Source: Lytechinus pictus (lineage: Eukaryota). From it: DNA of 64,000 nt. The position numbers were made by a program, and so were the translations under genes. Shown here piece after piece: positions 2,474-63,456 of the stretch. How positions within the stretch are numbered: the first letter of the stretch is position 1; each line of letters begins with the position of its first letter. The stretch spans positions 41,292,001 through 41,356,000 of the forward strand of contig NC_087251.1 of assembly GCF_037042905.1 (NCBI RefSeq). The letters run 5' to 3'. The notes under the pieces were generated by a model. It did not search any database and was not told the origin of the DNA. It worked only from the letters and a program-made list of their open reading frames with translations.

Positions 2474-2943
2474 TTCCCATCCAAGCTCAGCCGAGTACAG
2501 GACAAATAGCGAAGAAGGCTGTACGGGTACGAGGCCGGTACGTACGGGAGGGAGCTGGGCCGGGCCTGGGACACTCACACATGCATGCGAGGCCCAGGTT
2601 ACGTACTCACTTGATCCTACTAATGATCTGAAGAGATGGACATTCATTGAATAGGTGAGAGATTCACTAACAGGTGGAGCTAATGTAAATGCAGTTTCGA
2701 ACGAGACTTAAGTCATGTATTTAAGTCTACTCTAGTGACTAGTCTAAGGACTAAGTAAGAGTAAGAGTCTAACCTCGCATGTTGTGTGAGTGAGTTCTAA
2801 CTTACGTTAGACGTCTAGAAGTAGAAGAAAGTAGAATAAGACTAGATCTAAATGATAAATCTTAGACCAAAAGCCATGTACACTGGATACTGACACTGTC
2901 ACACATATATTATACTTGTGGTCTGTTGTGGAAGAAGATTGAG

Positions 2944-3456
2944 CCCCGGGGGGGGGGGGCACTCGACCAAAAAAGTAGTAGGTGTGTGCCGCGGGCGAGA
3001 CAAAAAACGGGGGCCTTGGAGTGGGCTTATTGTAAAAAAGAGGGTCCTCGGAACGGCTTCGGAACTACAAATGTTTGTGAAAACGGGGGTCCTTGGAACG
3101 GGTCGCCTGCGTTGGAGTGCGTATGTATCCCTATGGAACGTGCATGCAGCTAGCCCGGCGGCACGACTGCGGGGCGCGCTAGCGCAGAGGCGATGGTCGG
3201 ACAGTGCTCTGCGGCCGCTTTTCACCAAAATTGCGACCGGAACGACGTAACAGAAAATATGCAAAGCTTGGAGCGGATTTCTTTCTTCTTTTTTCTCGCT
3301 AAGAAGAAAATGCTATGCTTTGGAGTGGCTTTCTTTGATCTTTTTCTCAATAAGACAAAAATGCTATGCCTTGGAACGGAAATTTGAGTGTAAAAATGGG
3401 GGTCCCCTCCGCGGCACATACCCACTATGCATTATACACTGAGTGCCCCCCAGGGG
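2944..3456. mobile_element. Unclassified GC-rich MITE, CCCCGGGG(n)CACTC..GAGTGCCCCCCAGGGG
   Basis: Terminal inverted repeats; ATTGAG direct repeat at 2938-2943 and 3457-3462. Confidence 0.65.
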
Positions 3457-4117
3457 ATTGAGCTTGGACGAAAGCTAGACCTGGAAACTTGGCTGCAGCT
3501 TTCTGCATTTTTCCAGTACATCCGGTATTAAATAAGGTAATAAAAGCTTCGGTCTTTGTTTTTTATTGGTTCTGCTTAACTCCGTTGGCGCTCCACTCAC
3601 AAATAGTACAGAGACCGAAGTTCTAACTCGATCTGTAGTACTACAGGGACTCAGCTCAATTAAATGGCCATGTCCAAGTTTGGATATTAAAGCCAGGGCC
3701 GGGAAGTGGCAGTTGCGCGACAGCCGAAATATAAAGTCAATGGTGTTTTTCCTTTTAATTCAAATTTATATTTTCCAGTTTTGGTCCATTTCAGGCCAAA
3801 ATGGAATAATAATCTTTATTTTGGTCCATTTCTTTTAAATGTTTTTATGAAATAAAGACAAAAATCGATGAGCCCCGATAGGGGGAGTTTGCATAATTGT
3901 TAACCCCCTAATGGCGGCTGCACGATTGCGAGCCGTCTGTGTATGAGGAGAATTTTTTTTTTTCTTCAAATGTTAAAAAACTCTTTGAAACAGACGGCTG
4001 CCAGCTGTCTAAGTCTATCTATACTATACTCTATAGCATTAGCAGTTCCTGATCACGATATTTGGGAAAGCGGTGGGCTTATTGTTTATTGTACTCGAAA
4101 TGTGACTAAGACTTGCC

Positions 4118-5873
4118 TAGACCAAAAGCTTCAGTCTCTGTATTTTGGTAGTAGGGGAGATCGGGTTAGTTGGAACATTTTTGACAAGAATGGCTGTAAA
4201 ATCCAATTAGATTTTATTTGAGAAACAATATATCTAAGGGCTTCAAATGTACCCCATAAAATTTGTAACTCTATGATGGTTACTGAAAAAATCCACCTTG
4301 AACAAGACCATCGCAAGCGTTCCAACTTACCCCATATATGGGGTAAGTTAGAACATGGTATGGGGTAAGTTGGAACACTGCCTGGTCAATTAAGAATTAT
4401 ACTAAAACTACTTACAACCGTAATATTTGCTTTATTTTTTTCAAGTTCAAAATATTAAAAGTGGATTTGCTGAACTTTATGTTTTTTATTATACAGCCAC
4501 TAATGCAAGCCGACTGTGTAGTAGAATTCCGCTTATAAATGTGTGATGCAATTAAGTGTACTATCAGCAATTTCATGTACTTCTGCATCAAATTTACATG
4601 ACAAAAATTATTGTTTATATTTTTAATTAATCAATTATGCAAATTTATAAGCATATGAAATTTGCCCTAATTTTTTGGGGGTATGTTTTTGCCTTTAACT
4701 CTATTTATTAAGCTAGTAGAATGCCACCCAAGGGTTCATTACATGCCGCCACGCACAGAAAAATCAAGCCATAGAAGTCGTGTGTTGTGGACCCAAGAAG
4801 TGAGATCCCAGCACGCGCGACCCACTAGTTAGAAATCCACTGCCAAACGCGGTTCGTGGTGCGAGGTTAGTATGACTAATACTAACCTCGCAATACGTGT
4901 GAGTGGTAGAATGCTAATTTTTTGGTGAGAGTATCAATTTTTACCTTTATATCAAATATCCACAAAAAATTGAAAAAAATATAATTTCTTATGTATTATT
5001 TGTTTTTAAATTTGTATTTCTTTATTTTTTCTAAACCTTTGTTTTTATTGTTTTTCCGATGAACTTTGTCGGGGACTCTTGCGATCATAAATAGCATAAA
5101 ATAAATACATTTGAACCAACAAAAGTAAAAATAATCATTTATGATTTTTGGTTGAAAAACACAATTTGCATTGACCTTGTACATGTACATGGAATCACGT
5201 TTTTGAGCAATTTTGGGTCCGACATGCACGTAGAAAATGTTGCGTAATTTCGAAAGCGCGCACCCAGGCATCGCAAATTTGGTCTCAAAAGATGCGCAAG
5301 ACTTGAAAGTAAAAAGTCAGTGAGCGGTGCGGTCAAAACATTATGTGCAACGGCGTAGTGACGAAATTCGTCAAGGGGGGGGGGGCTCAAATTGATATCC
5401 AATGTTTTTATTCATAATTATGTTTGGGGTAAGTTGGAACATGTTCCAACTAGCCCCTTCAATTTTGTTCCAACTAACCCCAGAGGCCCATTTGACATTT
5501 ATAAGCTTACAGCACAAAAAAAGGGACTTTACCATGGCATACTAATAACCTTATTTTGTAGTTTGGTACAAGTGTCCATTATACTCCCGAACAGGCCAAC
5601 TTGATCTATAAACTTCTCTGAGATACGGTAATAAAAAAATTCTGAAAGAGAAAAAAATTACTCAGAAGGTGGAAAAACAAAAATTCCTTTCTAACTTCAC
5701 CAGGCTTGTTGCACTTGTGTTGTCTGTAATATGGTGGATGGCTGTTGATAATGGCAATAAATTGAGGGTAGTATTGCATAAAGAAAATTACAATGTTCCA
5801 ACTAACCCCGATCTCCCCTAAAATGTCAGAAATTGTTAAATAAATCCCCAGAAACGATGATTATTCCTGTCTA
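4118..5873. mobile_element. Second, inverted copy of the TAGAC..GTCTA element, 9-bp TSD, split by a TA-flanked element
   Basis: AGACTTGCC at 4109-4117 and 5874-5882; 4118-4149 and 5819-5873 are reverse complements of the two ends of 2336-2473. Confidence 0.75.
4154..5818. mobile_element. Non-autonomous TA-TSD DNA transposon (Tc1/mariner/pogo-like)
   Basis: TIR GGGGAGATCGGGTTAGTTGGAACA / TGTTCCAACTAACCCCGATCTCCCC flanked by TA; repeated subterminal GGGGTAAGTTGGAACA motifs. Confidence 0.75.
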
Positions 5874-6678: not shown

Positions 6679-9600
6679 GTATGTACTACATGTACTATTA
6701 CTATTTATTCGGATTAACAATATTACTGCTGTGTTATGTGGATACATCGGATTCCCGAACTACATGTATGTGGTGTGTAATGTGGCACGGAGGCATACCA
6801 AAAAGAGGAGGGGAATGTTATATCTACAGTATATATCACATGGATCTTTAGTAGTTTAGATAGGTGGAACAATATTGAATTTGATTAGAATGATGGTGAC
6901 TTTGCCACTAATTGAAACTCATAGAAACTTTAATTTTGCTTTAGTTTCATCTAGGCTGTTGGTCAATGGTAATGTAACATGCATTGATAGTGTTCAAATT
7001 TGTATGCATTTGAACCCAAATTTTTGTTTTTTACGTGTATATATTTGTTTTTTTGCAAGGAAATTTGTATTACATTTGATCAGTAAAAAGATAAATAAAA
7101 ACTAATATTTTGTTCAGTGGATAAAATGAGATCCGCCTACTTTCTTTTGTTTTGTAGAGTGGTCCCTATTCATAGAAATCGTGTCAATGAAATTAACTAG
7201 CGGAATAAGTAAATCAAGAAAAGGATGAATATTTAAGATAGAAATAATGTTAGATAATATCTATAAATGAAATTACATCTGAAATATTTTTTACAGAGAA
7301 TGAAATTAAGAGATATATCTTATGCTTTTGTTTCAAATTCAAATGGTGAATGATTTTCAATAGGAAAGAAATAGAATTAAATTGGTGATCTTCAGTATGT
7401 CACCCGTGGAAAACGGTATATTTGTGGGGACGGTCAGGTACCTTTACCCTAACTATACAGAAAGGAGTGTAATTACATTGTAACTATCTTTGGCAGAGAT
7501 GAAGTAAACAACAGGGACCATGCCTGTAATGAGTTTGATGATGAAGAAGAAGAAAAGAAATGTGAGCTTGGTATATCATCTTCCATCGCTATTCTAAGCA
7601 TCTACACGAAGGCACTCGTCCAATCTCCTGAAAAGCATGAGCAGAGAACTGATACTGAAGACCCATGGTGGAGTGAACTCGTGGAGACAGTGTGGGACAT
7701 TCTGGAAGCGGGTGAAGCCCTCGTCTGTGTGCAGCTAGCGCAAATCCTGGTCCTTGGTGAGAAGGAATTACCCCTTGGTGGAAGAGCCAGGAGCGAGGTA
7801 CTTCAAGTGATTTGGGAACGACTTGTCGCAATGAATGAAAAGAGTGTCAAGTATTCAGAAGCGGTGAATGAGAACATTTACCTCATCCTCTGTGCTCTGT
7901 CGGATGCATTCTTCCCAAATGCTTCTTCCGAGGAAGCGAGGACTGCAACTGACAAAGCGAATGATACAGGACTTGACGATGGTTCCCAAGGCTTGGATCT
8001 CTTACAATTGGAGTTGTTTTGGCAACTCGTTCAACAGGGGCTTATCCACACCAATCCCCTGACACGGAAACGTTGTAGTTATCTGATGAAGAGGGCGGTA
8101 GATGTGGCCGCAACTTCAGGTCGATGTCTAGGTCAAGGGTCACATGAGGTTACCAAGCAACCATTATTCTCATGGGATCCAGCCCAGAAAGAGAAACTGC
8201 TACGTCTCTGGTTTGAATTCTTTCTCATCTATGAGACTCTTGATCAAGTACAGGTGAGTTGTTCCCCTATTTTAGTTTTAGTTGAAGAAATTGGCATTGG
8301 TTTGGATTCATCGCTGCATTCTAGCTCGTCTCAAAGCCTACCTTACCATGCCGAGTTGATCTTTAAGGGATTTAGGTATTCTATATTGCAAACTCAGGAC
8401 CCAGTCTTACAAAGAGTTACGATTGATCCGATCAACACCAACTACATGTATATGAAAATCCATCAATGTCATAATTTTTTCTACAGGAAATTTGCACAAT
8501 GTACCTTGTGAACAAAGAGAAGCACACTGAATTGTCAAGAAAATGATGAATGTATGAATATACATCATGTCGAGAAAATATTTTATAATTCTTAATTTAT
8601 AAACATGCATTTTAGATGTTGACGTCTCTTGCTTTCCATAGTTGTGGTTGATCGGATCAATCGCAACTCTTTGTAAGACGGGGCCCTGGAGTCAAGATGT
8701 ACATTGTGTGTTGTATGCCTGGAAAACTTTATCCTATAATACCTTTCTGGCCTGATGCAGTATGGTATAATGCTGTAAAAATAAAGCTAACAAACTCCAC
8801 TTGAAATTTTAAACTCAGAAGGCTCATCAGTTAATGAAAATTTTAGGACTTTCTAACCATATTATACATTCATATTTTTCAACCAATATCACTCAACTTT
8901 TCACACATGCAGTAGCCGTATTGTTGTAGATACTACAGTAGTTAAACAAAATGTTGGATTGTAATTTGGAAATTTGTAATATTTTGGTATATATACCATA
9001 TCTTTGTCTATCTCTCACATGTGATATTGTAATTTTTGTTTTATTTTTCATCAATTACTTTCTTGATTTGTTTAGTCTTTTCACCTTGATTTCCCTTCTT
9101 ATCTTTTGTACAGTATTCTTGATTTGCCACATTAAAGAGTCACATTTTACAATGATTTTGTTTTTGTTTGTTATTAGATCCATGTAGTAACCCCAGCAAT
9201 GCCTCGTCTTGCTCAGCTGAAAAAATCCACTTATCTATCAGATGAAAACTTAGGTTTGTATTTTAGTTCTGCATATATGTCAGGCTCTAAATTTCAACAT
9301 TTTAAAGCAAGGCCACTTTTCTGTAGGGCTATTTTTATTATAGCACAAATGGCAGGAAATGAAAGGGGCACTAAAATCTCCCAAGGCCAATAAGAGGGTC
9401 ATTTAGGGGAGTCAACAGGCCATTCAAAGCCGTGGTCTTTAATGACCTTGGATCAATGAATAAAAGGAATTGATCAGTATGTTATAAAAAAATCATTCTA
9501 AAAGCTTATTTTATGATATTTCTGGATGTTCAGTAGTTTGAATTGGGTGTATGTTTTAATTTTTTTTTGTATTAGGTATGCCTGTGCTACATTCCAGTTG

Positions 9601-36600: not shown

Positions 36601-39600
36601 ATTGATAAAAATATGTTAGGAAATAATCTAGGCTTTGAATTTGTTTGAGAAATAAAAAAAGTGAAATTCTAGCTAACAAATTTTTCAACCTTATTTTTAT
36701 GTACATATATCTCAATTTTTTCACCACACAGGATGTTTGTGTTTGTTGTACTGAATTTGCGACCGATTAGCAATTTTCGAAATCCTCGAAAATAACAGCT
36801 TATGCAAGCCTTTCAAATCCTTGCATCTGATTGGCTGAAAACAAGATAGCCTGTGAAAATCTCTGTGAAATGCTCCCCTGAACTTGATACAACACTGAAG
36901 CTTAATATCCAATTCAAACACCAATTGTAATGTGCAGTATTTTCAATCAATCTTTAATATCCCTCAATCAAAATGAGAGATATAAACAAATGAGTGTTTT
37001 AAAAAATCACTGCGATGGTGGATTCCATATGATCACTCTACTTTATATTTATAGAAGCAATTAAATTGAAAGTCCTGAGACTCCGGAAGACCCAAATCCT
37101 TATGATCAAGTGACACTTATACAAACAGGAATCACGTCATGATAGTTAAGTCACTACCGATGTAACTCGTGTTTGGCATTATGGAACAATTTTATTGGCG
37201 TCCTCGGAAGTAGCTTTATTTTCTTTTAATTCTGTTACTACATGTATCTACCACAAAATAATGAGGTTTTAGTAGAAAACTATTAAAATGAAGAGTTCTA
37301 GTGATAGAACAGACTCATTCTCCTTGTTCTTAATATCATAAAGAAGGCAGAAACCACACATACTTGGAAAATGATGATATGAAAAGCCCATGTTAAATAG
37401 CAAATTGTTCATACTTTTTACAGGAAATTTTAATGATAATTATATATGCTTTGTATACAGAGAATACATAGAGACGTGAAGTTTTAAAGTGTGCTTCTAA
37501 AAGAATTTGATATAATGACCCCTTATTTACAATGTCTATTGCTTTGATAATTTTATCATAAGCAGTGGTGCTGGAACATTCTGGCCAAACAGTACTGTGG
37601 GAAGGCGATCAACTGTGTATTAAAGAAAGTAGTTGCATTAAACACTCATTCCAGTCTGTAAAACCAAGGTTTATTGTCACTACAATCATAGTAGGTCAAG
37701 ATCCATTACAATAACATAAACTTAACTTTGTGAAATCATGGATTGTAAGCTGAAAAATAAACGAATATACTGAAGATCACCAACACAGATAAGCGCACAT
37801 GGGACAGTGTATTATTACTGCTTAGTACTGCTCAAATTTTATGCTTGTTTTGATTATTTCTCGGCAATTATACACCTTCTTCCAGAGTCCTTAGGTGTAT
37901 ATTTTTCATTTGCAGTATACATAGACACCTGGGTGGTCATTTGATTGAATTCTGAATGAACTCGTTCTTGAATCCATTACCACAAATGGCATTTACCTGT
38001 AACAATGGTTCGACCCTCCAACCGTGGTCTGCAGACTACTCCGACCCCTTGTCTGATCAGAACGTTCCGATTTCATTGATCATAAACTCATCAAATGGCA
38101 TTTACTTCGACCCTCCAACCGTGGTCTGCAGACTACTTCGACCCCTTGTCTGCTCAGAACGTTCCGATTACACTGGTCATAAACTCATCAAATGTTGTGA
38201 TTTAGAAGATTAATTCTCTGTTTTGCTATCTTACCAGGTGCATGATGTCAATAGCATCAGCCTGTATCGGTCATTTCTTGATGCTCTACTGGACCATGCA
38301 GTGAGAGAAAACAATGGTCAAGCGAAGAATTCACAAATCTTGACCATCAAGATCATAGAAGGCAGGAAGCAGCTTTTGAAAGGTTGTCAAGCCCTCATGA
38401 ACTCACAGCTCCAGGATGAGGTATGCAGAGCTGCCAACCATTAGGTTTTGCCGTAATCATTACGTTTTTTCATTCAAATTACGGCATTATGGTTTTTCTT
38501 TTCAAATTACGTTTTTTGACAATTTTGATAATGTGTGTACATAATTGTACAGGGGCGGATCCAGCTTTTTATAAAGGGGGGGGGTTGGGGTGGTATGCGA
38601 GGGAGCGTAGCGACCGAGTCCAAGCGAGCGAGGGGGGAGGGTGTGGGAGGGGGGTGTCCCCCCTCCCACAGTAGGGAAAATTTTTGAAAATCTGTGTGTG
38701 AAAATGGCGTTTTCTTGCATAAAATAGAATAAAATAAAATTACAAGTTTAAAAAAAAAGATAAGATTTAAAAAAATGGTCCCCGGATTTTTTTTTTGGGG
38801 GGGTTGCAACCCCCCCTCTAGATCCGCTTCTGTTGTATGTATGTGTAGTGCGTGTTGAGCCCGAGATGAGCCTGGTACTTGCGCGTGCGTAGTCGCCCGC
38901 CGGCCGGTTTTCCAACGCACTTTAATAATTTGATAGCGCGCGCGTACATACGTTTATAGTTGAACATGCGAGCGGCATGCATGGCACGAATCGTGATGTA
39001 TAGTGACTGGTAAATATGTCTGTAAGGATGATGACGTCATCCAAGATGGCAACTTACGATGACCAACGAAAGGATCGAGGATGATTATGTTTTGATCATC
39101 ATTTGAAAGGAAATAGCAGTAACTGCGGTCTAAGGTACGATATTTCTGAATTTTATATATCTTATCTTAAATTTGCATGTAATTTCTTTCCTATAAAGTG
39201 ATGTTTTATTTAAAAAAAAAACGATCCGAAAATCGGATTTCCGCCGAATGATTGATCTAACGCAACTGCTAATACGTTGTATTTACGTACGGGCCAACAC
39301 TCTGTCTGGTTAATATTCATCAACTCGTATCAAACAAATACGATAAATTCGGCTTTGAAAAGACCTGGAAAGCTCTTCATTGTCCCCTGAAGTACTAATT
39401 CTGGGTGATATTCAACATTTATTGATAGTTTCACATGATTTATACTAGAGAGATGTCCTACTGCTTTTGGAATTCTTTAAAAAAGTCGGCACTGTAGCAT
39501 TCAGTTTAGCAGGAATGGGAAGATTTCTTCCCCGGTTCTGGCGGCCTAGATGTCTGCTCTATAGTGCTGTCACTGCTGGGGATGATTGAGTGTGCATGCA

Positions 39601-42600
39601 GTGTGATTGAGGCTGAGCTGTGTACATCGTAAAGTGATCTACGATGGGACTTTTGTGGAATGATCTCAACTTCTAGATCTATTTGAATTTTAGATTAGAT
39701 TGATTTATGAATAATTTTTTTATATTTGTGGAATGTTACATATGTACTTCCATTTTATGACACTTTAATTTTAAATGGTACTGTTTGGCAAAAACAATGT
39801 TACTTGGGAAGAGAAGTCTGAATTGATGTGAACTTTTTTTTTATTTCTCTTAGTCTACAATTTGGTAGTTTGTCAGGAAACTCAACACAAAACAATGCAT
39901 TATTTTAAAAGTGGAAAGGTAGCCCCAGAAAAACGGAGCCCTAAAAATGTTCACCAGAACTGATTTTGGTGCCCCTGAAAGAATTTTTTCTCGACAGATC
40001 TTTACTCTGATAAGGAAGTGCCGGAGTAGGTTGCACTACAAAATTAAAGTCCTACTTGTCTTTTTGAAAAATTTGCCTTGGTGCCCTTTTGACTAGAATA
40101 AAAGTGGCCTTCATGCCCTTAAGCATGGCGTTGATGCCCCTTGAAATTTTGGGGCATCCAAGGCCACTTTGCCGGTTACCCCAAGCTGAAAGTGCCCTTT
40201 TAAAAATGGCCTTTCCCCTCTCAATTCTTAATTCGAGCCCTGCTACTGACTTAATTTAAGTTGGTAGATTTTGTCAAAACAGGCCCAAGACTAAGGGTCC
40301 AATTTGTAACACTAGGTTACTTAGCCCAGACTAGGCCTAGAGATTATTATTTTTTATTGTTCACTGCATACATACTTTTTGCATTGGATATTTGTCGCGT
40401 GTGGTTTTAAGGTTCGTTTTAACATATTCCTTTTTTTTGTTGGAAATTCCTTTTTTTGGCCAGAATGATTCCCTTTTTTGCTTGCACAAGGTTGGCAGCT
40501 CTGGGTATGCAGTATTTATGCTATAAAACTTATTTTTAGTTTGGTTAACTCCCTCAAAATGTCACTATTCCAACTCAGGAATACAAGCAAATTCAGTTCC
40601 AAATCGAAGTCAACGCAGTCTTGTCATCAGCTATGATTTGAAATTTTACTCAAGGCTTGTAGCAAAGCAGAATTTTGATTTTAGTATTCCTGATAATACT
40701 TTCAATAAGATGATCTTACTTGTTTGAATTTTCAATATCAAATATGTTTTTTTTTAAATGGATTGTTTAGTCTGCGGCCAGCTTTAGGGATGAAGGAGTT
40801 TAGATAAATAGAAGGAAGTTATCAACTCTTTCATTTTTATGTTTCTTAGGGCTAAGATTTTTCTCCCTCCAAAATTGTGATTGTGTAATGAAACTTCGTT
40901 TTAAAAAAAAAGAAGAAAGACTTAAAGGGGTACTCCAGGCTGAAAATAATATGATTTGAACAGATTAAGAAAAATCAGACAAACAAATCACAAAGTTACG
41001 GCATTTAAAATATTTGCATTATTTCGATGAAACAGTTCAAGGCGTATCTGCATGAATATTTAATGAGCAAATTGATGATGATATGTCCCCTCTTATTCTT
41101 TAGTATTTTATTATATGAAATTAGGTTAATTCAAATTTTTTCCTTCAAGAACCAACAAATTTGAATGACAACTGATTTTAGTGCATTAGATATTTATTGT
41201 TGCAACTTATTTCATGACAAGGAAGACATATCATTCACACATGTATAAAAAATGAAACAATTATGATTTCATGTAATGACATAAGAAAAAGTAAAGTGGT
41301 GATGTGACATCATTAGCCCACCTAATGTATATTCATGACAACGTGCTTATAACTGTTTTCACAATATATTGCTAAACTTAAAAATTCAATAACTGCTATT
41401 TGTTTAAGATTTTTATGCAATTTTTACACTCTATTTATCTATTGACACTATTTATTTACATATAAATATTTTCAGCCTGTTGTACCCCTTTAATGAAATT
41501 GAGTTTGGTTAAATATGAGTTTTGAAGAACAAAAGAAAGATTTTGTGTTATCGTATCACATATCCCATATAGAAATTCGAACATTGCTTTTTGAGAAGAT
41601 TAAAGTGTCTTGTAACTACCTTTGTAACTTAAATTATTGTAGTTTTGATTATCCTTTGTTGCACTTGGGATAGAATTCAGCAGTTCTTGCAGGTTCTCAT
41701 GGTAATCCATGATTCCATAACATGATCGGAGAGGGAGGATTTGTGTTACACAAAAACAGTTAGTAGACCAAAAGATATTGCTTTTGACTATGATCGCTAT
41801 TTCATGCATTATACATCATGCAATTTAATTGGTCTTTTTTCATAGGGGTATCACTTAAATTGAGATTTTATACCTAATCTACAAGATTTCCCTTCCTCAT
41901 GAATTACCCATAATCCATTTGTCACTCTGCGCAGAATCATGCGCATGCATACTGCCGCCCAATTATGACATCAATTCTGAGTTTTGTTTTTTTTCTCTTT
42001 CTCTCATTCTTTTTTATTCCTTCTTGTCTATCCCCCACGTCTGTCTCTCTCCCTCTCTCACCCTCTCTATCTCTCTCTCTTCTTCTCTTTCGCTCTCTCA
42101 CCACTCCCTTTTACTCTTTATTCTCTCCCATTTAGCACTTAGTAAAAGAAATGCATCGGAGTTACACAATGACATCAATCTTGACGTGGATCTTATCATC
42201 AGATGTTTTGAGTCCTGTCGCAATGCTGCCCTCTATAGCCAGTATGGTGACATCACTTCTAAGTATAGAAGCATCAACCTCGGCCAGATTAAAAGAACTT
42301 GCTAGTCTGGATGATAAGAGAGGTGAATGATCAGTGGGATTCTTTTTATTAAAACCAAAAAAAGTGGCATTAATAAATCAAAAGCTTTCACACCACAATT
42401 TTCACTGCTTGCCAGCTGAGTATTTTGCTTTAAATTATAGAAATTCAATCAATATATCAATGAATAATAGGTTTATTGAGCTTTTAACAGGCCTGAATTA
42501 TCAAGCTGAATTACCACTTTTCACTTTAGATGCTTCTTGAAAGCAGCAAAATGAGAAAGATAGAATGTTCAAATCAAACTGAAAGGAAAGTAATTCATTT

Positions 42601-62350: not shown

Positions 62351-63456
62351 CAGAGCTGCCAAATAGTAGGATTTTGTCGTATCCCGTACGATTTTTCACT
62401 TAAAATACGACACTACGATTTTTCTAAATAAAATACGATTTTACGAAAATATAGCTATGTGCATCCGTGTATTATGTGTGTGTATATCTCATTGGCATTA
62501 CGTACGTAATACCGCGCTCGTATATAGCGAGCGCGGTATTACGTTGTGTGTGTGCACAACAGGCAAGTACGATGTTCCCAGCGCTAGCGCAGCCATGGCC
62601 AATCCAGGACTCATGTGTGCGCGCGTGCATGCTTATGCATGTACTGTGTGCGAATCTCGCGGCGCTTTATCATCTTTGGTGCGAAGCTAAATTCACTGTG
62701 TAGCTACCGGTACGGTACTAGCGCGCATGGCCTGGCTGACGATACCGCATGCTCCGGCCGGCCTCGTACTCGTCTTGAGCACCGTCGTCGTTTGTGTCTG
62801 TGATCATATTGTGAACAACGGACAAAGAGAGTTAATTCTGTAATATTCATCATGGCATCGAAAGGATCTGGATCATCACGGAGACAAACATTCCTATCCG
62901 AATATACGACTAGGTGGCCATGCATAGTGGCCAGCAAGAAGAACGATTACACCGCTCGATGTACGGCATGTGCATGTAACTTCTCGATATCGCATGGCGG
63001 TGCGAAGGACATCAGCTTGCACCTAAGTCGGCAGAAGCATCGACAAGCTGTGGAAGTCATGAAAAACGTGACAACACTTGCTACATTTTGGACAAAAACA
63101 GATTTTTCTGTTAAAACTGCTTTGAAATGAAATTCAGTGATAATCTATTAAGTAAGTGCAAAGGAGCAGCGACATCAGCAGCTGCATCAGGGTCCCACAT
63201 GTAAATGAGGTAACCTATCAGTCATGCATGTAATTATGTTACTATTAAATGAAGAACCTATGAATTTACCCCCCCTAATCCTATTCAAACCTGTCGTATA
63301 CATAATATACATGTAAAAATTACAGTTGGCACAGCAAAATAATGAGATGTATGATAGGAAAGTACACGATGGGTATGAATAGGATTTTTTTGTCTAAAAA
63401 TAGGATTTTTGGGGTTAAATAATAGGATTTTTGTTGAAGTGTGGTTGGCAGCTCTG
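62351..63456 (+). mobile_element. Internally deleted hAT-like element, TIR CAGAGCTGCCAA, 6-bp TSD CTAAAA
   Basis: CTAAAA at 62345-62350 and 63457-63462; subterminal TACGA/TAGGA repeats. Confidence 0.88.
62852..63130 (+). pseudogene. Truncated hAT-type transposase N-terminus (zinc finger)
   Basis: F..EY...WP.I........ARCTAC...FSISHGGAKDISLH...KH resembles the C2H2-type finger of hAT transposases; no catalytic core follows. Confidence 0.75.

What the first reader, a model, noticed from the sequence alone, without database searches (positions are those of the whole stretch)
38420..40509. Transposon inserted into a splice donor and duplicated it
Seen: the 6-bp TSD GGTATG is the last base of exon 11 plus donor positions +1 to +5. 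Because the element begins with CAG, the original G|GTATGCAG donor is regenerated at the left junction, and a second G|GTATGCAG appears 2.08 kb downstream at 40504. Inference: the insertion is neutral for normal splicing but creates a competing donor that could exonise element sequence into TARBP1 mRNA (a poison isoform). This is a direct example of a TSD creating a splice site.
Basis: partly seen in the sequence, partly recalled or inferred. Interest (0 to 1): 0.7.

Follow-up and report, generated by a model that had tools for sequence, protein, structure and literature searches.

The report
Jumping gene sitting on a splice site
A 2-kb non-coding hAT-type jumping gene landed exactly on the exon/intron border of a sea urchin TARBP1-like gene and copied the splice signal, but RNA data show only the original splice junction in use, so it is a tidy textbook case and not a new mechanism.

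Summary
Window 38426-40503 is a 2,078-bp non-autonomous DNA transposon with perfect 14-bp terminal inverted repeats, flanked by GGTATG on both sides. The family has at least 40 copies in this genome. In 37 of 39 copies with both ends found, the target-site duplication (TSD) is a perfect 6 bp. A long degenerate copy with the same termini encodes a hAT dimerisation domain, so this is a hAT element of the known 6-bp-TSD ('hAT6') kind.

RNA evidence shows that the exon is 38238-38420 and is spliced GT..AG to 42136. This rests on one error-free 2,335-nt contig and 23 stranded junction reads. So the TSD does cover the last exon base plus donor positions +1 to +5, and a second copy of the donor sits at 40504/40505.

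The functional reading is not supported. No junction from the distal donor or from inside the element was among the listed joints. The distal site pairs slightly less well with U1 and ranks only 13th of 204 GTs in the stretch scanned. Low-level use cannot be excluded, and it is not shown that the RNA-sequenced animals carry the insertion.

A related species' DNA contig stops matching exactly at the element boundary, which hints at an empty orthologous site. TSD-derived splice sites are already known from introners. The scan had already noted this family elsewhere in the same window (s1-317670).

The parts
38238..38420 (+).
   Evidence: The frame is open. RNA contig X1 record 1 matches 38235-38418 with 0 differences, and the joint to 42136 is seen in 1 contig plus 23 reads, all in sense orientation.
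38420..38425 (.). Left copy of the 6-bp target-site duplication GGTATG (last exon base plus donor +1 to +5)
   Evidence: The 6-bp TSD length is fixed by 37 of 39 family copies.
38421..38428 (+). Proximal, used splice donor GTATGCAG; +1 to +5 come from the TSD and +6 to +8 from the element's first three bases
   Evidence: Joint GT..AG 38420 to 42136. U1 duplex -5.8 kcal/mol.
38426..40503 (+). Non-autonomous hAT (6-bp-TSD type) transposon, 2,078 bp, no long ORF
   Evidence: At least 40 genomic copies at 89-97% identity. No ORF above 137 aa and none with a family match. It shares the TIRs and about 92 bp of the 5' end with the transposase-bearing lineage, which carries PF05699.
38426..38439 (+). 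5' terminal inverted repeat CAGAGCTGCCAACC
   Evidence: pair I12: 14 nt, 100% complementary.
38550..38832 (+). Nested 283-bp MITE (TIR CAGGGGCGGATC...), with 5-bp TSD TTGTA at 38545-38549 and 38833-38837; inserted into this copy after, or apart from, the rest of the family
   Evidence: Other copies join query 124 directly to 408. RNA reads from paralogues skip 38544 to 38833. At least 40 full-length genomic copies. 5-bp TSDs in 6 of 6 copies inspected.
40490..40503 (+). 3' terminal inverted repeat GGTTGGCAGCTCTG
   Evidence: pair I12.
40504..40509 (.). Right copy of the TSD GGTATG
40505..40512 (+). Distal duplicate of the donor (TGG|GTATGCAG); no use seen
   Evidence: Sequence. U1 duplex -5.4 kcal/mol, 13th of 204 GTs. 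No joint from here among the listed joints.
40510..42135 (+). Rest of the pre-existing intron, including a very high-copy repeat at about 40879-41583, ending in the acceptor AG at 42134-42135
   Evidence: depth table and joint. RNA depth is zero in the unique intron bins.
42136..42322 (+). Next coding exon
   Evidence: X1 record 1 matches 42134-42323 with 0 differences. Open frame.
62351..63456 (+). Second member of the same TIR family in the window (TSD CTAAAA). It is an internal-deletion derivative that keeps the N-terminal transposase exon (ORF 62804-63127).
   Evidence: It aligns to L047 at 1-151, 296-811 and 3942-4273.

Best explanation
A non-autonomous hAT transposon of the 6-bp-TSD group ('hAT6'-like) integrated into the staggered-cut target GGTATG. 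That target was the last base of a TARBP1-like coding exon plus the first five intron bases. Repair of the stagger duplicated the six bases. The exon therefore kept an intact donor core (GAG|GTATG), followed by the element's own CAG, which by coincidence equals the old +6 to +8. A second copy of the core, with the old intron behind it, was moved 2,084 bp downstream. The spliceosome still uses the exon-adjacent copy and removes the element as part of a now 3,715-nt intron. The distal copy is an ordinary-strength GT deep in the intron, with no exon attached to it, and is not detectably used. Shown here: the element, its family, the TSD length, the hAT affiliation of the lineage, the exon border and the use of the proximal donor. 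Inferred: the order of events, tolerance of the insertion because the TSD buffered the donor, and silence of the distal donor in carriers.
For: TIRs and TSD at the stated coordinates. At least 40 copies. Perfect 6-bp TSDs in 37 of 39 copies of the two subfamilies. A 4,273-bp degenerate copy with the same termini (L047:404-4676) has PF05699 at 22.0 bits against a cut-off of 21.4. A sister family with a 6-bp TSD and an intact 823-aa ORF has PF05699 at 32.2 bits. hAT families with 6-bp TSDs are a described group, hAT6 (PMC12730594). The gene carries colinear SpoU_methylase hits over three 3' exons and a weak TARBP1-domain hit. The joint 38420|GT..AG|42136 is seen in one RNA contig with 0 mismatches, 5 reads in X21 and 18 reads in X22, all in sense orientation, and the unique intron bins have zero RNA depth. 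The genome's U1 5' end is canonical, and the proximal donor pairs a little better than the distal one. A DNA contig of a related species (X9 record 7) matches 38200-38425 at about 94% and stops exactly at the element boundary with 47 more letters unlike the element.
Against: It is not shown that the animals behind the RNA runs carry the insertion, because no DNA run of the same species was offered and the unique intron has no RNA coverage. Normal splicing in carriers is therefore inferred. The joints table listed 15 rows and hid 87 lower-supported ones, so rare distal-donor or cassette junctions could be among them. The 47 loose letters of the related species' contig were not displayed, so the empty site was not read directly. 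The 2-kb element shares only its TIRs and about 92 bp (75% identity) with the transposase-bearing lineage, so mobilisation by that transposase is inferred.
Confidence: 0.82

Rival explanations
1. The distal donor at 40504/40505 competes with the proximal one. It would yield either a 2,084-nt extension of the exon, with a stop eight codons into the element, or a short cassette exon. The cassette would be built from the element's pyrimidine-rich 3' end, using an AG at 40462-40463 or 40489-40490, which gives 41 or 14 nt, both frame-shifting. Either product would be an NMD-targeted poison isoform of TARBP1.
For: The donor core -1 to +8 is an exact copy of a proven functional donor. Three T-rich tracts followed by AG lie within 45 nt upstream of it. 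The in-frame stop at 38442-38444 is confirmed. NMD would hide such transcripts from steady-state RNA.
Against: No such joint appears among the listed joints, against 23 reads and a contig for the canonical one. The distal site has G rather than A at -2, a U1 duplex of -5.4 kcal/mol, and rank 13 of 204 GTs in the stretch scanned. Unique intron sequence has zero RNA depth.
Confidence: 0.07
2. The insertion is a segregating, mildly harmful allele. The canonical junction reads come from animals or haplotypes without the element, and in carriers splicing of this intron is impaired.
For: Sea urchin populations are highly polymorphic (general knowledge). The nearest copies are 97% identical, so the insertion is not ancient. 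The related species seems to lack it. No data here link genotype to RNA.
Against: The X1 RNA contig is identical to the assembly over 374 exon bases, which suggests the same or a very close haplotype. The donor core -3 to +8 at the proximal junction is unchanged by the insertion. The element has since received a nested MITE and keeps intact TSDs, so it has persisted for some time.
Confidence: 0.1
3. Introner-like intron gain: the transposon itself created this intron, with splice sites supplied by the TSD and the element.
For: TSD-derived splice sites are the hallmark of introner elements (PMC11282704).
Against: The intron runs 1,626 nt beyond the element to an acceptor at 42135 that is not part of the element or the TSD. 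The related species' contig already has the exon followed by GTATG without the element.
Confidence: 0.01

Closest known systems
hAT6 group of hAT DNA transposons (Kapitonov and Jurka 2007, Repbase Reports, as cited in PMC12730594)
   Same: Short TIRs that start with CAG. Consistent 6-bp TSDs in place of the usual 8 bp. A transposase lineage with the hAT C-terminal dimerisation domain. An animal host.
   Different: The window copy is a non-coding 2-kb derivative. It shares only the termini and about 92 bp with the coding lineage. No phylogeny was made to place the L047/L048 transposases inside the published hAT6 clade.
Introner elements (Micromonas and other lineages), in which the TSD supplies one splice site of a new intron (PMC11282704)
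   Same: A TIR/TSD DNA transposon whose target duplication yields a splice-site motif at the element's edge.
   Different: Here the intron existed before. The TSD merely preserved an existing donor and made a spare copy. The element is removed as a passenger inside a larger intron, and the family shows no sign of specialising in genes.
Ac/Ds (hAT) insertions in maize genes that are spliced out through sites in or near the element's ends (own knowledge of work from the late 1980s and early 1990s; not looked up here)
   Same: A hAT-family element in a transcribed gene is tolerated because splicing removes it.
   Different: In the Ds cases the insertions are in exons and use cryptic sites inside the element, which gives altered mRNAs. 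Here the authentic junction is retained unchanged.
TE exonisation and poison exons (for example Alu exonisation; own knowledge)
   Same: The combination of pyrimidine tract, AG and donor at the element's 3' end has the look of a potential cassette exon.
   Different: No spliced read supporting any such exon was listed.

Membership tests
hAT superfamily, 6-bp-TSD (hAT6) group | Target-site duplication of 6 bp | tested here: met
   37 of 39 copies with both ends found have perfect 6-bp TSDs, and the other two are 5/6. The definition of hAT6 by 6-bp TSDs is taken from PMC12730594.
hAT superfamily, 6-bp-TSD (hAT6) group | Short terminal inverted repeats of the hAT type (beginning CAG) | tested here: met
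   A 14-bp perfect TIR, CAGAGCTGCCAACC, conserved in all copies.
hAT superfamily, 6-bp-TSD (hAT6) group | Autonomous partner that encodes a transposase with the hAT C-terminal dimerisation domain | tested here: met
   L047:3882-4430, in a 4,273-bp copy with the same TIRs, scores 22.0 bits for PF05699 against a cut-off of 21.4. The sister family's 823-aa ORF (L048:2195-4663, minus strand) scores 32.2 bits. The L047 copy is degenerate. No intact autonomous copy with exactly these TIRs was found.
hAT superfamily, 6-bp-TSD (hAT6) group | Phylogenetic placement of the transposase within the published hAT6 clade | not tested
Introner (transposon-derived intron) | The element together with its TSD makes up the whole intron and supplies both splice sites | tested here: not met
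   The spliced intron is 38421-42135, while the element is only 38426-40503. The acceptor lies 1,626 nt beyond the right TSD.
Exonised TE / poison exon | Spliced transcripts that join element sequence or the distal donor to flanking exons | tested here: inconclusive
   None appears among the 15 listed joints, against 23 reads for the canonical joint. However, 87 lower-ranked joints were not displayed, the genotype of the RNA animals is unknown, and NMD was not blocked.
TARBP1 (TAR RNA-binding protein 1 / SpoU-type methyltransferase) gene | C-terminal SpoU methylase domain | tested here: met
   Three consecutive + strand exons match PF00588 colinearly at profile positions 18-61, 61-102 and 103-141, with scores of 17.9, 19.9 and 33.6 bits.
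TARBP1 (TAR RNA-binding protein 1 / SpoU-type methyltransferase) gene | N-terminal TARBP1 domain (PF25050) | tested here: inconclusive
   21.3 bits in exon 7453-8508, below the 27-bit cut-off.

The most novel reading that the evidence does not exclude
The spare donor, together with the pyrimidine-tract/AG motifs in the element's last 45 bases, forms a conditionally used frame-shifting micro-exon of 41 or 14 nt, or an exon extension with an early stop. It would be visible only when NMD is blocked or in particular tissues, and would give carriers a transposon-born poison isoform that lowers TARBP1 output. More generally, this family's weak CATATG-like target preference would make GTATG-type donors recurrent landing sites.
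Probability: 0.06. Interest if true: 0.45.

Novelty: new member of a known kind. Interest (0 to 1): 0.25.

Why it matters
The locus is a clean natural illustration of how a target-site duplication can buffer a gene against a direct hit on a splice site. The six duplicated bases leave the exon with an intact donor, so a 2-kb insertion at the most sensitive position of an intron is apparently tolerated. That is useful as a teaching example and as a marker locus, since presence or absence seems to differ between two related urchin species. It adds no new mechanism. hAT elements with 6-bp TSDs and TSD-derived splice sites are both described, and the proposed poison isoform has no support in the RNA data available.

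Tried and rejected
1. I searched the 5.8-billion-protein collection with the stop-to-stop ORF across the junction (window:38214-38441). The aim was to catch ORFs called on contigs of empty alleles, which would read through into the old intron. No candidate was found.

2. I looked for an alternative haplotig of the locus in the same assembly, using the left flank 37700-38425. Only the locus itself matched. The other hits were an unrelated repeat of about 300 bp at 75-77% identity.

3. An Rfam scan of 37500-42500 for SINE, tRNA or snRNA-like parts found nothing.

4. Pfam on the exon peptide and on the N-terminal transposase ORF 62804-63127 gave no meaningful family.

5. An 8-bp TSD, the usual hAT length, was considered for this copy and rejected. 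The 8 bases on either side do not match, and the family consistently gives 6.

6. Alternative boundaries, with the TSD as GTATGCAG or GGTATGCAG, were rejected because the TIRs would then no longer be terminal.

7. I considered Dada and IS3EU, other superfamilies I recalled as having TSDs of about 6 bp. The hAT domain hit in the long copy decided against them.

8. No exon count was made, so 'exon 11' stays unverified.
Full report
**What is in the sequence**

Window 38426-40503 starts with CAGAGCTGCCAACC and ends with its exact reverse complement, a 14/14 match (pair I12). It is flanked on both sides by GGTATG, at 38420-38425 and 40504-40509. The left junction reads GAG|GTATG + CAGAGC. The right junction reads ...CTCTG + G|GTATG + CAGTATTT. 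One small correction applies: the bases at -3/-2 differ (GA at the proximal site, TG at the distal site), so what is duplicated is -1 to +8.

**It is a transposon, and the TSD really is 6 bp**

A search of the window's own 812-Mb genome found at least 40 further copies at 89-97% identity. I located both termini in the fetched loci and compared the flanks.
- In the 2-kb subfamily, 27 of 28 copies (this count includes the window's own copy) have a perfect 6-bp direct repeat, each of a different sequence. The remaining copy is 5/6.
- Adding the second subfamily, which shares the same TIR, gives 37 of 39 perfect.
- The TSDs show a weak palindromic preference, C-A-T-A-T-G. Position 1 is C in 15 of 37 (p = 0.001) and position 6 is G in 17 of 37 (p = 0.0002).
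- GGTATG matches this preference at positions 3 to 6, so a GTATG-type donor is a reasonably good target for this family.

**Superfamily**

The 2-kb element has no ORF of note. It shares only the TIRs and about 92 bp (75% identity) of its 5' end with the transposase-bearing lineage.
- That lineage is represented in the window by a 1,106-bp deletion derivative at 62351-63456 (TSD CTAAAA). It keeps an N-terminal ORF.
- A protein search of the genome with that ORF led to a 4,273-bp degenerate copy with the same termini (L047:404-4676). One of its reading-frame fragments matches the hAT C-terminal dimerisation domain PF05699 at 22.0 bits against a cut-off of 21.4.
- The same search led to a sister family (L048:1809-5048; TIR CAGAGATGCCAAC; TSD TACTAG). 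It has an intact 823-aa ORF that matches PF05699 at 32.2 bits.
- hAT families that make 6-bp rather than 8-bp TSDs are a described group, hAT6 (Kapitonov and Jurka 2007, as cited in PMC12730594).
- The element is therefore a non-autonomous hAT of that kind. Placement of the transposase in the published hAT6 clade was not tested.

**Internal anatomy**

Positions 38550-38832 are a nested 283-bp MITE (TIR CAGGGGCGGATC...) with a 5-bp TSD, TTGTA. Other copies of the host family lack it (query 124 abuts 408). RNA reads from paralogues skip exactly this piece. The MITE family has at least 40 full-length copies, and 6 of 6 inspected copies have 5-bp TSDs. Most other copies of the host family carry about 300 bp more at query position 877/878.

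**The gene and the exon border**

The + strand carries a long multi-exon gene. Its last three exons match the SpoU methylase profile colinearly, and its large second exon weakly matches the TARBP1 domain. That is consistent with a TARBP1-like gene.

The frame 38238-38420 is open, at 61 codons. I laid one contig set that is probably RNA (X1), two stranded ribo-depleted RNA runs of the same species (X21, X22), and one DNA contig set of a related species (X9) on 38200-42400.
- The joint 38420|GT..AG|42136 is supported by a 2,335-nt X1 contig with no mismatch on either side.
- It is also supported by 5 reads in X21 and 18 reads in X22 (15 start points), all in the orientation expected for a + strand gene.
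- The number 'exon 11' was not checked.

**Is the distal donor used?**

No joint that starts at 40504, and no joint from 38420 into the element, appears among the listed joints. The unique parts of the intron (40738-40878 and 41584-42006) have essentially zero RNA depth. There is thus no sign of read-through or retention.

The genome's U1 snRNA has the canonical 5' end ATACTTACCTG. A simple duplex calculation gives -5.8 kcal/mol for the proximal donor and -5.4 kcal/mol for the distal one. The distal site ranks 13th among 204 GT dinucleotides between 38238 and 42136, so it is not an outstanding site.

If it were used as an exon extension, translation would stop eight codons into the element, at TAG 38442-38444. 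Cassette exons built from the element's T-rich 3' end would be 41 or 14 nt long, and both would shift the frame (read). These consequences are inference only.

Three caveats apply:
- The tool listed 15 joints and hid 87 weaker ones.
- NMD would deplete such isoforms from steady-state RNA.
- Nothing shows that the RNA-sequenced animals carry the insertion. No DNA run of that species was offered, and only one call each of the run-finding and read-laying tools was allowed.

**Age and orthologous site**

The TSDs are identical and the TIRs are perfect. The nearest relatives are 97% identical. A MITE has since landed inside the element. The insertion is therefore fairly young but not brand new.

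A 433-nt DNA contig of the related species (X9 record 7) matches 38200-38425 with 11 substitutions and 3 gaps. It stops matching exactly at the last base of the left TSD, although it runs on for 47 more letters. If the element were present there, the alignment should have continued into its well-conserved terminus. This hints at an empty orthologous site, but the loose letters were not displayed, so it is not proven.

Depth over the element body in that species is near single-copy level (7-24, against about 6 for unique sequence). The family may therefore have expanded mainly in the lineage of the window's species.

No second haplotype copy of the locus exists in the assembly.

**Mechanism**

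The best reading is an ordinary cut-and-paste integration with a 6-bp stagger that happened to straddle an exon/intron border.
- The stagger is repaired into a duplication, so the exon keeps -3 to +5 of its donor unchanged whatever the element's sequence is.
- The element's CAG start happens to restore +6 to +8 as well.
- The gene goes on using that donor and discards the element with the intron.
- The spare donor is stranded 2 kb inside the intron, without exon context.

The rival readings were each weighed. They are a functional poison isoform, a harmful segregating allele, and introner-like intron gain. The first two cannot be excluded with the data at hand and are given low odds. The third is contradicted by the intron's extent.

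**Comparison with what is known, and verdict**

The element belongs to a known kind, hAT with 6-bp TSDs. The principle that a TSD can furnish a splice site is established for introner elements (PMC11282704). Tolerance of hAT insertions through splicing is classic for Ac/Ds (own knowledge).

This locus is a neat, well-documented instance and not a new mechanism. Interest is low to moderate. The same scan had already flagged the family's 6-bp TSDs in this window (s1-317670) and named the host gene and organism (s1-317535). I re-tested the former fully and the latter only in part.

Noticed in passing
window 38550-38832 (TSDs at 38545-38549 and 38833-38837): A nested 283-bp MITE with TIR CAGGGGCGGATC... 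and 5-bp TSDs. The family is abundant (753 first-look candidates, at least 40 full-length copies at 87-95% identity). 5-bp TSDs were seen in 6 of 6 copies checked. It may be a hAT5-type MITE; this was not tested.
   Followed up: partly
L048:1809-5048 (G000:C7:46890308-46893547): A sister transposon family with TIR CAGAGATGCCAAC, a 6-bp TSD (TACTAG) and an uninterrupted 823-aa ORF carrying the hAT dimerisation domain. It could be a still-active autonomous element. A second identical-length ORF hit lies at G000:C11:14809897.
   Followed up: partly
window 62351-63456: A 1,106-bp internal-deletion derivative of the transposase-bearing lineage (TSD CTAAAA), just 3' of the TARBP1-like gene. It keeps a 108-aa N-terminal ORF with a C..C..H..H pattern that Pfam does not recognise. 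At least 11 near-identical (94-97%) derivatives exist elsewhere.
   Followed up: partly
window about 40879-41583: A very high-copy repeat inside the same intron. Summed contig depth is in the thousands to about 20,000, in both the RNA-like and DNA contig sets of two species, with many rearranged joints. It was not classified.
   Followed up: no
window 37707-38194: Just upstream of the exon, a repeat of about 300 bp has at least 40 genomic copies at about 75-77% identity (37707-38005). It is followed by two tandem 89-nt units, 94% alike, at 38009-38097 and 38106-38194.
   Followed up: no
window 38905-39186 (inside the element): This segment has 100- to 500-fold higher contig depth in the related species' DNA than the rest of the element (about 2,500-3,500 against about 7-24). 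It is probably a separate, older high-copy repeat that became part of the element family's body.
   Followed up: no
G000:C2:31961190-32010256: A tandem array of at least 35 U1 snRNA genes with a 1,405-bp period, plus dispersed copies. All have the canonical 5' end ATACTTACCTG.
   Followed up: no
family-wide (loci L002-L049): Target sites of the CAGAGCTGCCAA family show a weak palindromic preference, C-A-T-A-T-G. The family's body is near single-copy depth in the related species, which suggests a lineage-specific burst.
   Followed up: partly
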